From positions 62,001-126,000 of the IMG/VR virus record IMGVR_UViG_3300042147_000020: a DNA stretch of 64,000 nucleotides. One strand, written 5' to 3'. Under the pieces are notes generated by a model, which saw nothing but the letters and a program-made list of their open reading frames with translations, was not told the DNA's origin and did no database searches. Every line of letters starts with the position of its first letter. The first letter of the stretch is position 1. Both the position numbers and the translations under genes were made by a program. Below, in pieces: positions 27,674-34,366 of the stretch.

Positions 27674-28126
27674 TTAACGACCGCACCAACTCTTCTTGGT
27701 GCCACCGTCGTACGCAACTGCAAGACCATTCTTGATCAGCAGTTGTGCGATGTCTATGTCATCCACCATCACTGTGGAGACGATGCGGAAGTACTTATCA
27801 CGTTCAGGGTTCACCAGTGTAATCTGGTTGGCTGCGTCGATGTACTTCTTCAGCAACAGTCGGGCTTGACGTGCTTTGGCTTTCTCAGCTTCTTGCTCAG
27901 CGACTACTTTACAAGTGCTACGCATTTCAGGAGTATCAATCCCAGCCAAGCGAATCCCGATGTTCTTTCCGAAGAGGTCAGGAACCTCAGGGATGTTCAC
28001 ATAGAGAGTATCGCCATCGTAAATCCTAACCACTTGGGACGACTTCAGGTTGAAGTCCCCGAAGGCAAAGACGCTGAATGAAGCCAGCATCAGTACCAAT
28101 GTTGCCACAATGTTTCTAACCTTCAT
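27674..28126 (-). CDS. Thermonuclease (SNase-like) with N-terminal signal peptide
   Basis: VVRIYDGDTL, IRLAGIDTPE and DKYFRI motifs. MKVRNIVATLVLMLASFSVFA is a Sec-type signal. Confidence 0.88.
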   Translation of the reverse strand: MKVRNIVATLVLMLASFSVFAFGDFNLKSSQVVRIYDGDTLYVNIPEVPDLFGKNIGIRLAGIDTPEMRSTCKVVAEQEAEKAKARQARLLLKKYIDAANQITLVNPERDKYFRIVSTVMVDDIDIAQLLIKNGLAVAYDGGTKKSWCGR

Positions 28127-28184
28127 ACTAAACTCCAAGGGATATAGGACATACTATCCTTGGGTCGTCTGTAGGCTTCTTAAA

Positions 28185-28381: not shown

Positions 28382-28510
28382 TGGGCATCCCCGACAAGCC
28401 TCGAACTTGCGACCTCCAGCGCTCCTCTCGTTAAACCATCTTCACTACTGGAGAGTTAATGATGGAACTTGAGGTTGGACTGGTGCTCTAACCGACTGAG
28501 CTACGGGGAC
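28382..28510 (-). ncRNA. tRNA-like RNA with a 58-nt insert in place of the anticodon loop
   Basis: Acceptor GTCCCCG/CGGGGAT, D arm GCTC/GAGC, T arm GCAAG-TTCGAGG-CTTGT. Stem CCAGT/GCTGG encloses 58 nt. Ends G-CCCA. Confidence 0.8.
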
Positions 28511-29060: not shown

Positions 29061-29735
29061 TCACTCGTGGGTTGTGGACAACTCACTGATGATGCACACT
29101 GACCCGTCTTCCACAGGAGTAGTATCGCTGTAGTCGACTTGATTGTAGACGCCCCCGTGGAACTGAAGAACACGATCGTTCCAAGAGCTGTCCAACCGTA
29201 GGGCTGGACAGATGGACTTACGACCTTGACACAGAACCGAAACGGATACGGAACCACCGGCGGTCACGTGAACACTGATCTTGAAAGGTACCCCAAGTGG
29301 GACATTCTCCAAGATGGTGGCGTTCATGATTACCGGATCGTCAAAACTAGCACGGAACCCGATCGTGAGCTTACCTTTGTTCCAGAACACCTTAAGCGGC
29401 GGGGTGTTCGAGTCTTTGACATGAAGCTGTGCTACCACAACCTTCTGGGCCCAGTTGACCTTGGTCAACGTCATTGTCTGGCGGCTCCAGTGATGGGCGG
29501 CACTTGACAAGGACCAGTAGTCAGCCTCTTTCCATTCCGTACGAGTACGGTGTACGCTTTTACTCGAAGCCCCCTTTGTGGGAGCAGTGAACTGAATGGA
29601 ACCGTCTTCGAGACGGAGCACGCAGCTTGCACAGTTGGCTAAAGCGTAGTCACCCATGACTTCTAGAGCCACTGGGTCAGTCGGAGAAACAGGTAGCGGT
29701 GTAGCGATGATGTACTGCGATATGTCGACAAACAT
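29061..29735 (-). CDS. Polysaccharide lyase family 7 (alginate lyase-like)
   Basis: ~224 aa. RTEWKE, AQLH and FHGGVYNQ correspond to the PL7 motifs R(S/T)ELR, QIH and YFKAGxYxQ. Confidence 0.8.
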   Translation of the reverse strand: MFVDISQYIIATPLPVSPTDPVALEVMGDYALANCASCVLRLEDGSIQFTAPTKGASSKSVHRTRTEWKEADYWSLSSAAHHWSRQTMTLTKVNWAQKVVVAQLHVKDSNTPPLKVFWNKGKLTIGFRASFDDPVIMNATILENVPLGVPFKISVHVTAGGSVSVSVLCQGRKSICPALRLDSSWNDRVLQFHGGVYNQVDYSDTTPVEDGSVCIISELSTTHE

Positions 29736-29780
29736 TCTGTCATCTCCAGTTAGGACCATAAGATGACGGAACGGGGAATG

Positions 29781-30777: not shown

Positions 30778-31602
30778 TTAACGACGGTTGTAGTTGATGC
30801 GCTTAACTTCAAGTTCAGCGAACAAGTCCATCGGGTAATCGTCTGGCAGGTGAGCAGCAACTGTAGAGTTGGTGGTCTGCGGGTCGATCACAATGCTGAA
30901 CGGCAGCCGAACGAGGTTGCCCAGTGCACCGTTGATGATGATGTCGCGGTTGATCTTGGTCGCATTGCTGAATCGGGCCGCAACCTCTACACCGTCTTTG
31001 GTAACGATGCGCAGTAACTTGATCGAGTCGATGCTGTCAGTGGAGTCAATCGCTACACCACTGGCTCCGATCAGGCCGAACAGAGACTTGCGATCGCCGT
31101 CCTTCAACGGGAGACGGATCACCGAAGTGTCGCTCACGATGGTAGGTTCGTGTAGGATCTGCCAGTCTTCAGCCAGTTGATCCGATTGTGCCGGAGTCCA
31201 CGGGGTGAATACGTTCTGTGCAGTCTTCATGCCGACCCATGGTGCGAGTGTTGGACACTCGTTCTCACCGGGCTTGTAACCGACAGTTCCACAACCCACG
31301 TCGTAATGACCAGGCTGAACCATTACCAACCACATACCTTGACCATTCCACGAAGGACGCGTAACACGCTTGCCTTGCTTCAGGGCTTCGATGGCTAACC
31401 CGAAGGTCAGAGAATCGCACGGACGGTAGCTGTCCTCGAACACGGCTTTAGGCGACCAAGACTGGTGACCGTTGTCGTATTCCACAAGGTAGCCTTCATC
31501 GGCACCGTTTTCGTCAGCAGGTAACTCCCAGCCTTTGAGTTGGTTGTAGTCCAACCGAGACATCGGAGTTCCGATAACCTTCTTGGTACCAATGTAGTTC
31601 AT
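30778..31602 (-). CDS. tad2: DUF2829 / Tad2-family protein with N- and C-terminal extensions
   Basis: LTFGLAIEALKQGKRVTRPSWNGQGMWL...MKTAQNVFTPWTPAQSDQLAEDW is the DUF2829 signature. Confidence 0.8.
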   Translation of the reverse strand: MNYIGTKKVIGTPMSRLDYNQLKGWELPADENGADEGYLVEYDNGHQSWSPKAVFEDSYRPCDSLTFGLAIEALKQGKRVTRPSWNGQGMWLVMVQPGHYDVGCGTVGYKPGENECPTLAPWVGMKTAQNVFTPWTPAQSDQLAEDWQILHEPTIVSDTSVIRLPLKDGDRKSLFGLIGASGVAIDSTDSIDSIKLLRIVTKDGVEVAARFSNATKINRDIIINGALGNLVRLPFSIVIDPQTTNSTVAAHLPDDYPMDLFAELEVKRINYNRR

Positions 31603-32692: not shown

Positions 32693-33126
32693 TGGCTCTG
32701 GCTTGCTTCCCGTTTGAATCGGGTCACTGAACTCGTTGTACGTAGGTACCCGCCAGACCGGTCGAAGACAAGGCTACTTCCTAAGACATCGCCAAGTCAC
32801 AATCTCGTTATCCTAAGCCACCCCCTAGGCACCTAATTGGATAACGTTACTACGTACGAGTTTGGGTGATCCTCCCGGCGTCTGAACGCCGAGTTAATGC
32901 ACAGTGAGCCGGATTTTCGTAACGCACAAAGGCAAACGACACGGCATGGCAAAGGATCATGTTCTACTCTACTTGCCCGTGGGTTAGAAGTCCTAGACTT
33001 ATTTTCCCTGATCACCGTAGATCAATGACGTAGCTCCGTGGCCTACTCCTTTCTAGGGGAGAGCAAACTTCGCGTTACAGGGTAAAACCATTACGTAGCC
33101 AGCAAGGGTCTCCGCAATGTTAAAAG
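32693..33126 (-). ncRNA. Structured RNA after tRNA-Gln (element B, up to ~430 nt)
   Basis: Shares ordered motifs with element A. Further helices AACTCG/CGAGTT, TACGTAG/CTACGTA, GTTATCC/GGATAAC and CGGCGT/ACGCCG. Confidence 0.5.
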
Positions 33127-33205
33127 TGGAAGAGGGAGATGGATTCGAACCATCGAATGTCGGGATCAAAACCCGATGCCTTTGGCCAGACTTGGCGATC
33201 CCTCT
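33127..33205 (-). tRNA. trnQ: tRNA-Gln(TTG)
   Basis: AGAGGGA/TCCCTCT acceptor, TT-TTG-AT loop, CCA end. Confidence 0.92.
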
Positions 33206-33209
33206 AGAA

Positions 33210-33351
33210 TTTTCTCACCTCGCCGCTAGGACGGCCCTAGCGACTTATTTTGCCGTGACCCCGGAGTTCAAGGTTGTCGACTCGGCTCGTTACGCCTTGC
33301 CCTACACGGTAAAACCCATGTGTAGGCACGAAGGCCAGCACATGTTAAAAG
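33210..33351 (-). ncRNA. Structured RNA after tRNA-Tyr (element A, ~140 nt)
   Basis: Hairpins CCTACAC/GTGTAGG and CGCTAGG/CCTAGCG, with motifs shared with element B. Confidence 0.55.
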
Positions 33352-33437
33352 TGGTGGGTGAGGTAGGATTCGAACCTACGAAGCACACGGCGTCAGATTT
33401 ACAATCTGATAACTTTGAACCACTTGTATACTCACCC
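33352..33437 (-). tRNA. trnY: tRNA-Tyr(GTA)
   Basis: GGGTGAG/CTCACCC acceptor, TT-GTA-AA loop, variable arm, ACCA end. Confidence 0.93.
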
Positions 33438-33444
33438 GATAAAG

Positions 33445-33566
33445 CTGCCGGTGTCGTGCATCGAAGCACTGCTAGTTCCCGGACCGCACTAGCTTTCCAT
33501 TAACGAAGGCTGACGCGTTGTCAGCTATGGCCCTCGGTAATGACTCCCCTGGAGTACACCTGCACA
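33445..33566 (-). ncRNA. Multibranch structured RNA (~120 nt) with a T-loop-like arm
   Basis: Closing helix GCAGGTGT/ACACCGGC. Arms ACTCC/GGAGT, GCTGAC/GTCAGC, GCTAGT/ACTAGC and GTGC-TTCGAT-GCAC. Confidence 0.5.
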
Positions 33567-33572
33567 ATAGAT

Positions 33573-33730
33573 TGCCCCTTGGTTGGATTCGAACCAACGA
33601 CCCTATCCGTTCAACCGACTCCGTTTAACGGGAGAGTTTAGTTACACCCGCTCAGTCAACTCCACCTTACGGTTCATGTTGCGAATACGAATGCTCTCGG
33701 ACTGTTCTACCAGACTGAACTACAAGAGGC
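33573..33730 (-). ncRNA. tRNA-like RNA with an 88-nt insert in place of the anticodon loop
   Basis: Acceptor CCTCTTG/CAAGGGG with a possible G-1:C73 pair, D arm GTTC/GAAC, T arm GTTGG-TTCGAAT-CCAAC. GTCCG/CGGAT encloses 33610-33697. Confidence 0.8.
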
Positions 33731-33747
33731 ACAAACCTTTAAAACTA

Positions 33748-33848
33748 GGCCCCTAGGATCAGATTCGAACTGATGACCTTCACAGAGACACTACCTCAAT
33801 TCAGTAGGCGTGTCTCTACAGCGCTCTAACCATCTGAGCTACCCAGGG
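33748..33848 (-). ncRNA. tRNA-like RNA with a 42-nt extended anticodon arm
   Basis: Acceptor CCCTGGG/CCTAGGG, D arm GCTC/GAGC, T arm ATCAG-TTCGAAT-CTGAT. Arm AGAGACAC/GTGTCTCT plus CTAC/GTAG. Confidence 0.8.
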
Positions 33849-33856
33849 AGAAACCT

Positions 33857-34009
33857 TTAAAACTCACCACGTTCTGGGCGAGCCTTAGTGGCTGCGATAC
33901 CAACAAAGAACACGACTGCGAATACACCCAGTCCTGCTGTTGGGTTAAACGCTGCCGGAATCGCTGCCGTGATTAGCGCTGGTACAAAAACAAACACTGC
34001 ACGCATCAT
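33857..34009 (-). CDS. 50-aa membrane protein (below the ORF-track cutoff)
   Basis: MMRAVFVFVPALITAAIPAAFNPTAGLGVFAVVFFVGIAATKARPERGEF, GGGAG RBS. Confidence 0.65.
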   Translation of the reverse strand: MMRAVFVFVPALITAAIPAAFNPTAGLGVFAVVFFVGIAATKARPERGEF

Positions 34010-34029
34010 GACAACAACTCCCTATTAAA

Positions 34030-34310
34030 TTAACCGCTACCCCGACCTACGGACTGCAATACAACAAGTGTGTCCCAAAAGGAAAAGAAAGAAAACCTTT
34101 GGGGGATGTGGTATGCAAGCACATCGTAGAGCACACTGTTGCCGGGTCACGCTCGACTAAACCGTAGTTTCACTGATACCCGTCGAACCAGTGTATCCCT
34201 GACCAGGGAAACCCCCCTAGAGCCGTGAAGAACTAGGTCGTGCTGGAGTCACTACTATCAGTCGATAACGCGTTAGTCTCTCAATAGATGCGCGGAGTAT
34301 GTAAAATAAT
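34030..34310 (-). ncRNA. Candidate structured RNA (~280 nt) at the head of the tRNA operon
   Basis: No ORF. Helices TCGACT/AGTCGA, CCCTG/CAGGG, GATAC/GTATC, GATGTG/CACATC and CCCAAAGG/CCTTTTGGG. Confidence 0.4.
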
Positions 34311-34323
34311 ACGTAATCTCAGG

Positions 34324-34353
34324 CAAAAAAAAAAGGGTTCTCGAAAGAACCCC
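34324..34353 (-). terminator. Intrinsic terminator
   Basis: GGGTTCT-TTCG-AGAACCC followed by T10. Confidence 0.85.
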
Positions 34354-34366
34354 TGAAGGGAGGATG

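What the first reader, a model, noticed from the sequence alone, without database searches (positions are those of the whole stretch)
33733..33864. Third tRNA scaffold with a 42-nt rod arm; duplicated leaders
Seen: the tRNA body at 33748-33848 has a 42-nt arm (normal is 17), with AGAGACAC/GTGTCTCT plus CTAC/GTAG and a 9-nt loop TGAATTGAG, ending G-CCTA. It and the neighbouring 88-nt-insert element share the same 14-nt leader AGTTTTAAAGGTTT (33733-33746 and 33851-33864). Inference: a tandem-duplicated expression cassette whose anticodon-arm cargo diversified.
Basis: partly seen in the sequence, partly recalled or inferred. Interest (0 to 1): 0.75.

Follow-up and report, generated by a model that had tools for sequence, protein, structure and literature searches.

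The report
Anticodon-less tRNA-like RNA in jumbo phage
A giant phage's tRNA gene cluster holds a tRNA-shaped RNA gene whose anticodon arm is replaced by a plain 42-nt hairpin; it is one unit of a set of "tRNA body plus swappable payload" RNAs that cannot read codons and whose job is unknown.

Summary
On the minus strand, 33848-33748 is a complete tRNA body (7-bp acceptor stem, D-arm, T-arm with TTCGAAT loop, 5-nt variable loop). A 42-nt hairpin takes the place of the 17-nt anticodon arm, and there is no anticodon loop. The 14-nt AGTTTTAAAGGTTT is repeated exactly, 118 nt apart.

The window comes from a 238.8-kb nucleus-forming (chimallivirus-type) jumbo phage found in rhizosphere metagenomes. 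The element ("A") is one unit of a co-oriented array: conserved leader RNA, 50-aa ORF, A, B, D, tRNAs, C. B and C, and their relatives' element E, are tRNA scaffolds carrying structured cargo with strong covariation.

A plus one repeat copy is missing from the five closest relatives. A diverged strain in another metagenome keeps it, with a compensatory pair change in the rod and a different scaffold 3' half. That same 3' half carries other cargos in related phages, so cargo and scaffold recombine modularly.

A is not an intron-bearing tRNA, a tmRNA or a Y RNA. My best reading is a non-decoding, RNase P-processed tRNA-like RNA. Its rod is either a minimal payload or an emptied arm. No expression data exist.

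Similar unannotated tandem units occur in the cultured phages FLC9 and RTH11.

The parts
33748..33848 (-). Element A: tRNA-like body with a rod arm. It has a 7-bp acceptor stem, D-arm, T-arm, variable loop and G73, followed by CC then T (no encoded CCA).
   Evidence: covariance model R1 gives 62.7 bits
33780..33821 (-). 42-nt hairpin replacing the 17-nt anticodon arm. There is no 7-nt loop, no U33 and no usable anticodon.
   Evidence: z = -3.98; compensatory A-U to G-C change at pair 33815/33786 in the X3 strain
33851..33864 (-). Spacer copy 1 (AGTTTTAAAGGTTT). It contains the TAA stop of the 50-aa ORF and is the 5' leader of A.
33733..33746 (-). Spacer copy 2: 3' trailer of A and 5' leader of B. 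It is the only copy present in relatives L001-L003.
33573..33730 (-). Element B: tRNA scaffold with an 81-88-nt (by where the arm is delimited) structured cargo, conserved in 10 related sequences.
   Evidence: 27 pairs, 13 with compensatory changes
33438..33572 (-). Element D: highly conserved RNA with an acceptor-like stem, a mini D hairpin and a T-like hairpin (TTCGAT loop).
   Evidence: 88% mean identity; the stems covary
28383..28510 (-). Element C: tRNA scaffold with a ~70-nt composite arm. It is the single intact C/E-type element of this genome.
33857..34009 (-). 50-aa hydrophobic ORF between the leader RNA and A. More distant relatives have element E at this position instead.
34010..34325 (-). 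Conserved ~300-nt non-coding leader region (U) that opens the array.
34333..34354 (-). Intrinsic terminator of the upstream 136-aa gene. It marks the start of a new transcription unit.

Best explanation
Element A is a gene for a non-decoding tRNA-like RNA.

What it is (shown). The DNA encodes an intact L-shape-competent tRNA body. U8, A14, G18-G19, the G53-C61 pair and the TTCGAAT T-loop are all present. The anticodon arm is replaced by a roughly 15-bp hairpin, so the RNA cannot read a codon.

How it most likely works (inferred). A is transcribed with the neighbouring tRNA-like RNAs and true tRNAs as one precursor. Host RNase P cuts at its 5' end and host enzymes trim the 3' end, both guided by the tRNA body. 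The product would be a stable RNA of about 100 nt. The tRNA body is the processing and stability handle, and the arm is the payload position.

Context (shown). A belongs to a phage lineage in which such scaffolds carry interchangeable structured payloads (B, C, E, D).

Status of A itself (inferred). A's arm has none of the conserved internal-loop motifs of its sisters. I therefore think A is the scaffold at the first position of the array with a minimal or emptied arm. It is kept mainly because a correctly folded tRNA-like unit punctuates the precursor, separating the small ORF's mRNA from B. Possibly it also serves as a small protein-binding hairpin.
For: tRNA body and rod:
- The body is complete and the rod is real.
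- No anticodon loop can be drawn, and ARAGORN's 'Thr(agt), intron at 35-36' is forced.

Genomic setting:
- A lies on the same strand as, and in tandem with, 8 normal tRNAs and three other insert-bearing scaffolds.
- The array follows a terminator and a conserved leader region.

Sister elements are real structured RNAs:
- B: 13 of 27 pairs have compensatory changes.
- C/E: 25 of 40 pairs, including the acceptor, D and T stems.

Selection on A:
- The X3 strain differs by about 10% in this stretch but keeps the apical 28 nt of the rod unchanged.
- One rod pair changes A-U to G-C.
- Its T-stem differs at 4 of 5 pairs, and all five stay complementary.

Modularity:
- The same scaffold 3' half carries the rod (X3), the B cargo (L003) and the E cargo (L031, one pair different).

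Emptied-arm precedent and pattern:
- Each of five related genomes or contigs has exactly one intact C/E element (116-132 bits).
- The alternative site is either empty or holds a neat collapsed arm. L004's C site has 9 bp plus a UUCG loop (66.9 bits), and this window's first site has A (62.7 bits).
- In some relatives the B scaffold degenerates to acceptor stem plus T-stem only. That is the minimal RNase P/CCA-enzyme substrate, and the cargo stays conserved.
Against: - There is no RNA evidence at all. Only DNA metagenome runs hold this phage.
- A is absent from the five closest relatives (L001-L003, L029, L030), so it is dispensable.
- CCA is not encoded (G-CC-T).
- Model R1 scores A no higher than a real tRNA-Asp (67-69 bits), so membership of the C/E family rests on position only.
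- The arm shows no significant sequence similarity to the E, C or B arms.
- The X3 ortholog is known only from a truncated difference table. Five changes in its 5' part are not listed, and the pair 33816/33785 is seen only as G-C to G.U.
- RNase P processing and RNA stability are inferred from tRNA biology, not shown.
Confidence: 0.6

Rival explanations
1. A is a decaying pseudogene: a former cargo-bearing scaffold, or a former tRNA, on its way out. It has no function of its own, not even in transcript processing.
For: - It is absent from the five nearest relatives.
- The arm lacks all conserved family motifs.
- CCA is not encoded.
- The genome keeps an intact C/E element elsewhere.
Against: - The scaffold has no broken pair in any stem.
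- The rod is perfectly paired and capped.
- The diverged X3 strain keeps it, with compensatory changes in the rod and T-stem.
- Two independent collapsed arms (A and L004's C site) are both cleanly closed hairpins in intact cloverleaves.
Confidence: 0.22
2. The rod is a functional payload: a hairpin that binds or decoys a host or phage protein. One example would be an anti-defence RNA or a Y-RNA-like partner of a host Ro/Rsr protein, displayed on a tRNA body.
For: - The apical 28 nt are unchanged in the X3 strain despite about 10% local divergence.
- The tRNA cluster also encodes a Tad2-like anti-defence domain protein.
- The overall shape (tRNA body plus long helix at the anticodon position) is that of YrlA, circularly permuted.
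- Phage RTH11 carries a YrlA-like module as the cargo of such a scaffold (44.2 bits, E = 1.5e-7).
Against: - Zero changes in 28 nt is only weakly significant (about 3 expected).
- The YrlA hit in this window (23.6 bits against a gathering score of 69) joins A's T-arm to B's D-arm and is an artefact of tandem tRNA-like units.
- The phage has no TROVE/Ro gene.
- No partner is known, and the element is dispensable in close relatives.
Confidence: 0.13
3. A is a true tRNA gene interrupted by an intron that is spliced out to give a decoding tRNA (ARAGORN: tRNA-Thr, anticodon AGT, 19-nt intron).
For: ARAGORN with introns allowed reports it as such.
Against: - No placement of the intron leaves a 7-nt loop with U33 and a purine at position 37.
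- The proposed intron site (35/36) is non-canonical.
- The extra sequence is far too short for a group I intron, and there is no Rfam intron hit.
- The phage has no RtcB, no tRNA splicing endonuclease and no Rnl2-type ligase.
- The sister elements' inserts are conserved structured RNAs, not introns.
Confidence: 0.03
4. The inverted repeat acts at the DNA level, for example as a protein-binding palindrome or recombination site, and the tRNA-like context is incidental.
For: There is an 8-bp perfect inverted repeat with an 18-nt spacer, and the unit is an indel flanked by direct repeats.
Against: - G.U pairs extend the helix on the minus-strand RNA only.
- The repeat sits exactly at the anticodon-arm position of an otherwise complete cloverleaf.
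- The X3 change is RNA-compensatory.
Confidence: 0.02

Closest known systems
Phage T4 species 1 RNA (rnaC), a small stable RNA in the T4 tRNA cluster
   Same: - It lies in a phage tRNA gene cluster, co-oriented with the tRNAs.
- It has a canonical T-arm (GGTTCGAATCC), an acceptor-like terminal helix and a long hairpin instead of a decoding arm.
- It is non-decoding. That its function is still unknown is my own knowledge.
   Different: - There is no sequence similarity.
- T4 rnaC lacks a regular D-arm, and its acceptor helix has two U-U mismatches.
- A is a full cloverleaf with only the anticodon arm replaced.
- Processing of rnaC by RNase P is literature knowledge; A's processing is untested.
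YrlA / bacterial Y RNA-like RNAs (Rfam RF02553)
   Same: A tRNA-like body (T-arm, D-arm, acceptor helix) is joined to a long helix at the anticodon-arm position, and the RNA is non-decoding.
   Different: - YrlA is circularly permuted: its ends lie in the long helix and its acceptor is closed by a loop.
- A scores 23.6 bits against a gathering score of 69, and only through a mis-registered A/B junction.
- The phage has no Ro/TROVE gene.
Engineered 'tRNA scaffold' for recombinant RNA expression in E. coli (Ponchon and Dardel approach; see PMC3753655)
   Same: A foreign RNA replaces the anticodon stem-loop of a tRNA, so that the cell processes the chimera like a tRNA and protects it from nucleases. 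This is what A, B, C and E appear to do naturally.
   Different: That system is man-made. For the phage elements, processing and stability are inferred, not shown.
Intron-containing tRNA genes (group I introns in bacterial tRNAs; bulge-helix-bulge introns in archaea and eukaryotes)
   Same: Extra sequence sits in the anticodon-arm region of a tRNA gene, and ARAGORN reports it as an intron.
   Different: No mature anticodon loop can be restored, there is no intron fold or bulge-helix-bulge motif, and the phage has no splicing enzymes.

Membership tests
Canonical tRNA (Rfam RF00005) | Acceptor stem, D-arm, T-arm and conserved tertiary nucleotides | tested here: met
   7/7 acceptor pairs, 4-bp D stem, GG in the D-loop, 5/5 T-stem pairs, TTCGAAT loop
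Canonical tRNA (Rfam RF00005) | 5-bp anticodon stem with a 7-nt loop, U33 and an anticodon; score above the family threshold | tested here: not met
   A 42-nt hairpin stands in its place. There is no RF00005 hit at E<=10, and default ARAGORN does not call it.
Intron-bearing tRNA | Removing the intron restores a canonical anticodon loop; a splicing system or a self-splicing fold is present | tested here: not met
   No such loop can be restored. There is no intron family hit. The phage lacks RtcB, EndA and Rnl2.
tmRNA | tRNA-like domain plus a tag reading frame and pseudoknots | tested here: not met
   ARAGORN finds no tmRNA, and Rfam finds none in the window.
YrlA / Y RNA-like (RF02553) | Permuted tRNA-like module, Ro-binding stem formed by the 5' and 3' ends, and a Ro/Rsr partner | tested here: not met
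   23.6 bits against a gathering score of 69, across the A/B junction. The topology is not permuted. The phage has no TROVE gene. The host is unknown, so a host Rsr cannot be tested.
C/E-type long-arm tRNA-like RNAs of this phage clade (defined here, model R1) | tRNA-Asp-like scaffold | tested here: met
   R1 gives 62.7 bits over the full model. The D-arm is 16/17 identical to the phage's tRNA-Asp.
C/E-type long-arm tRNA-like RNAs of this phage clade (defined here, model R1) | ~70-nt composite arm with the conserved GTT...ATA...GAR...TTTAAC internal loops | tested here: not met
   The motifs are absent from A. Arm similarity is not significant. A's score equals that of a real tRNA-Asp, against 116-132 bits for true members.
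C/E-type long-arm tRNA-like RNAs of this phage clade (defined here, model R1) | Position at the first scaffold site of the array, directly upstream of the conserved spacer and element B | tested here: met
   A sits where E sits in L004, L031, L033 and L034.
Stable tRNA-like RNAs of phage tRNA clusters (T4 species 1 type) | Located in a phage tRNA cluster, with a T-arm and acceptor-like helix, and non-decoding | tested here: met
Stable tRNA-like RNAs of phage tRNA clusters (T4 species 1 type) | Accumulates as a discrete stable RNA cut out of the tRNA precursor | not testable with these tools
   Only DNA metagenome runs hold this phage.

The most novel reading that the evidence does not exclude
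Some nucleus-forming jumbo phages use tRNA bodies as natural, recombining expression scaffolds. Leader-plus-scaffold cassettes sit in tandem in the tRNA cluster, and structured RNA payloads are exchanged, lost or replaced at the anticodon-arm position. The payloads include B-type and C/E-type cargos, YrlA-like nested modules and plain rods such as A. This would be a previously undescribed class of phage non-coding RNAs, possibly with counter-defence roles. Element A would then be a live member whose rod is a payload in its own right.
Probability: 0.35. Interest if true: 0.8.

Novelty: new variant of a known kind. Interest (0 to 1): 0.6.

Why it matters
Non-decoding tRNA-like RNAs in phage tRNA clusters have been known since T4 species 1 RNA, and none has an assigned function. 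This phage clade offers a comparative handle on the problem.

- Several such RNAs sit side by side.
- Their payload structures are backed by covariation.
- The same scaffold is seen carrying different payloads.
- There is one intact C/E element per genome.
- There are two independent cases of cleanly emptied arms.

The pattern says that the tRNA body and the payload are separable modules. It is the natural counterpart of the laboratory tRNA-scaffold trick. The same kind of unit is present, unannotated, in the cultured phages FLC9 and RTH11, so the idea can be tested at the bench.

For annotation, these units are missed by default tRNA finders, or reported as intron-bearing tRNAs with spurious anticodons.

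Tried and rejected
- **Rfam**: gathering and permissive thresholds over the window, the cluster and the 0.9-kb array found nothing for A. The only hit was a mis-registered YrlA match.
- **Intron reading**: rejected.
- **Search for A elsewhere**: blastn against 50,697 phage records matched only the true tRNAs. The apical rod 18-mer is absent from IMG/VR. A is absent from the whole contigs of four relatives.
- **B-cargo pattern in IMG/VR**: a degenerate pattern returned only the known relatives plus unrelated terminators.
- **'A's arm is a collapsed E arm'**: the MAFFT alignment looked suggestive, but a shuffle test gave p of about 0.6. I dropped the claim of arm homology.
- **'The X3 strains lack the 50-aa ORF'**: withdrawn. 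The joints have about 175 unaligned letters between them, so the ORF is probably diverged rather than absent.
- **Model R1 as a membership test for A**: uninformative, because a real tRNA-Asp scores the same.
- **The 136-aa neighbour gene**: no homologue in the phage collection and no Pfam or PHROG family.
- **Literature**: five searches found no description of such elements.
- **phiKZ, 201phi2-1, PhiPA3, SPN3US, Xoo-sp14, RSF1 and pPa_SNUABM_DT01**: no long-arm units found with R1.

Full report
**Where the window comes from.** The window is bases 62001-126000 of a single 238.8-kb contig. It encodes a PhuZ tubulin, a nuclear-shell (chimallin) protein, a split multisubunit RNA polymerase, a terminase and a tail sheath. 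It is therefore a nucleus-forming jumbo phage. Its nearest cultured relatives are Xanthomonas, Burkholderia and Ralstonia jumbo phages, at only about 40% protein identity. Near-identical DNA occurs only in rhizosphere and plant metagenome runs.

**The observation.** On the minus strand, 33848-33748 reads as follows:
- a 7-bp acceptor stem with one G.U pair
- TA
- a 4-bp D stem with a 9-nt loop containing GG
- G26
- a 42-nt hairpin
- the variable loop AGGTC
- a 5-bp T stem with loop TTCGAAT
- the acceptor 3' strand, then G73, then CC followed by T

ARAGORN finds it only when introns are allowed, and then forces a 'Thr(agt)' reading with an intron at 35/36. Rfam's tRNA model does not report it even at E<=10. 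A stem scan of my own finds all acceptor and T-stem pairs. The arm alone folds at -17.4 kcal/mol, z = -3.98. The 14-mer AGTTTTAAAGGTTT occurs exactly twice in the window, 118 nt apart. The upstream copy contains the stop codon of a 50-aa ORF.

**The surroundings.** The whole genome has nine ordinary tRNA genes, eight of them in this cluster, plus three insert-bearing tRNA-like genes. These three are A, B (33730-33573) and C (28510-28383). A terminator at 34354-34333 ends the upstream gene. The array then runs in this order:
- a roughly 300-nt conserved non-coding region (U)
- the 50-aa ORF
- A
- B
- D, a further conserved RNA with an acceptor-like stem and a T-like hairpin
- tRNA-Tyr and tRNA-Gln
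- further tRNAs interspersed with protein genes
- tRNA-Ser
- C

**Relatives.** Four IMG/VR contigs (L001-L004) and six metagenome contigs (L029-L034) share this locus.
- *B.* B's cargo is conserved in all ten sequences. Of 27 predicted pairs, 13 carry compensatory changes. Its scaffold, in contrast, varies. In several relatives it is reduced to an acceptor stem plus a short T hairpin.
- *C and E.* C, together with element E, forms one family. E occupies the first scaffold site in L004, L031, L033 and L034, where the 50-aa ORF lies in this window. The family is a cloverleaf plus a roughly 70-nt composite arm. Of 40 pairs, 25 have compensatory changes, including pairs in the acceptor, D and T stems.
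- *One intact copy per genome.* A covariance model of this family (R1) scores members at 116-132 bits. It finds exactly one intact member in each of five genomes or contigs. Where the intact copy is E, the C site of L004 holds an intact cloverleaf whose arm is only 9 bp closed by UUCG. Where the intact copy is C, which is the case in this window, the first site holds A.

**A in relatives.** A plus one spacer copy, exactly 118 nt, is absent from L001-L003 and from L029 and L030. It is not found elsewhere in those contigs or anywhere in IMG/VR.

Contigs of metagenome runs X1 and X2 are identical to the window. Run X3 holds a diverged strain with about 10% differences in which A is present. From the listed differences I reconstructed most of that ortholog:
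- The apical 28 nt of the rod are unchanged.
- The pair 33815/33786 changes from A-U to G-C.
- The pair 33816/33785 becomes G.U, unless an unlisted change restores it.
- The T-stem differs at four of five pairs, and all five stay complementary.
- The 3' scaffold half of this ortholog is identical over 32 nt to the scaffold that carries the B cargo in L003.
- It is one base pair away from the scaffold that carries the E cargo in L031.

One scaffold therefore carries three different payloads. Five differences in the 5' part of the ortholog were not listed, so that half is unknown.

**What A is not.**
- *Not an intron-bearing tRNA.* No canonical loop can be restored, there is no intron fold, and the phage has no RtcB, splicing endonuclease, Rnl2 ligase or CCA-adding enzyme.
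- *Not a tmRNA*.
- *Not a YrlA.* The weak Rfam hit joins A's T-arm to B's D-arm, and the phage has no Ro gene.

I also could not show that A's arm descends from the E, C or B arms. R1 does not separate A from a real tRNA-Asp. A's link to the C/E family is therefore positional only.

**How it most likely works.**
- *Shown:* an intact tRNA body without a decoding arm, embedded in a co-oriented array of tRNAs and tRNA-scaffolded structured RNAs, with signs of selection on the rod helix and the T-stem.
- *Inferred:* the array is transcribed as a precursor. RNase P and the 3'-end enzymes recognise the acceptor/T-arm stack and the elbow and cut the unit out. The tRNA fold protects the product.
- *Basis for the inference:* RNase P and CCA-adding enzymes are known to need only the acceptor/T minihelix. 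That minihelix is the part retained by the most degenerate B scaffolds. The engineered tRNA-scaffold method also shows that such chimeras are processed and stable in E. coli (PMC3753655).
- *Status of A:* because A lacks all conserved payload motifs and is dispensable in close relatives, I rate it as a minimal or emptied unit kept chiefly as a processing punctuation between the small ORF and B. A payload role for the rod is the main alternative.

**Origin of the repeat.** The spacer is an old feature. It precedes B in every relative, with related sequence. Two routes are possible. The two copies could arise from unequal recombination between an 'ORF-spacer-B' genome and an 'A-spacer-B' genome. 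Alternatively, relatives could have lost A by deletion between the repeats. The data do not decide between these.

**Wider occurrence.** R1 finds long units in the tRNA clusters of two cultured phages.
- *Burkholderia phage FLC9:* three tandem units of 118, 136 and 151 nt. Each is preceded by a repeated leader, and the region carries no annotation.
- *Xanthomonas phage RTH11:* two tandem units of 138 and 150 nt. One has a cargo that matches the tRNA-like core of YrlA at 44.2 bits, E = 1.5e-7.

phiKZ, 201phi2-1, PhiPA3 and SPN3US show only normal-length tRNAs. T4's species 1 RNA is the oldest known analogue. It lies in the tRNA cluster and has a T-arm, an acceptor-like helix and a long hairpin.

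**Verdict.** It is wrong on two points. A is not shown to be a duplicate of B, and the spacer is not an expression element. A is a new variant of a known kind, the non-decoding tRNA-like RNAs of phage tRNA clusters. Its function is untested, and there are no expression data.

Noticed in passing
window 34010-34325 (-): A roughly 300-nt non-coding region between a terminator and the array is strongly conserved in 10 relatives, with long invariant blocks. Hairpins change on both strands, for example the stem around the conserved TTTTCTTTCTTTTCC loop. Rfam has no match. It may be a large structured RNA or a processed leader.
   Followed up: partly
window 33438-33572 (-): Element D has 88% mean identity across relatives whose neighbouring protein is only 47% identical. 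It has an invariant core of about 60 nt, and its acceptor-like stem, mini D hairpin and T-like hairpin (TTCGAT loop) covary. No CCA is encoded. It belongs to no known family.
   Followed up: partly
window 33573-33730 (-): Element B's cargo (81-88 nt) is a conserved branched structure with 13 compensatory pairs. It stays conserved even where its tRNA scaffold loses the D-arm and most of the T-loop.
   Followed up: yes
window 28383-28510 (-); L004 16491-16569: There is one intact C/E-type long-arm tRNA-like RNA per genome. In L004 the C site is a cloverleaf whose arm is a 9-bp stem capped by UUCG. This is a second, independent rod-arm case.
   Followed up: yes
window 33857-34009 (-): A 50-aa hydrophobic ORF has a Shine-Dalgarno-like AGGGAG upstream. 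It is conserved at 66-86% identity in the closer relatives. More distant relatives have the RNA element E at this site instead. Its stop codon lies inside the repeated spacer.
   Followed up: partly
window 30778-31602 (-), 29061-29759 (-), 27674-28138 (-): Protein genes interspersed in the tRNA cluster include a Tad2-like (Thoeris anti-defence 2) domain protein, an alginate lyase and a staphylococcal-nuclease homologue. The alginate lyase hints at an alginate-producing host such as Pseudomonas.
   Followed up: no
L041 (Burkholderia phage FLC9, LC667451.1 128919-129378, minus strand): Three tandem, unannotated tRNA-scaffold units with different cargos. Each is preceded by a repeated leader (GTAGTAGATGT.TCA). 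Two of the cargos contain internal T-arm-like hairpins.
   Followed up: partly
L058 (Xanthomonas phage RTH11, OQ790161.1 75700-75998): Two tandem long units. In the second, the cargo is itself a permuted tRNA-like module (T-arm, closed acceptor hairpin, D-arm). It matches Rfam YrlA positions 18-91 at 44.2 bits, giving a tRNA-like module nested inside a tRNA scaffold.
   Followed up: partly
window 33076-33130 and 33303-33355 (-): The stretches downstream of tRNA-Gln and tRNA-Tyr share a trailer (CCACTTTTAACAT) and a repeated segment of about 32-41 nt, 225 nt apart. This suggests that the spacers carry repeated processing or structural elements as well.
   Followed up: no
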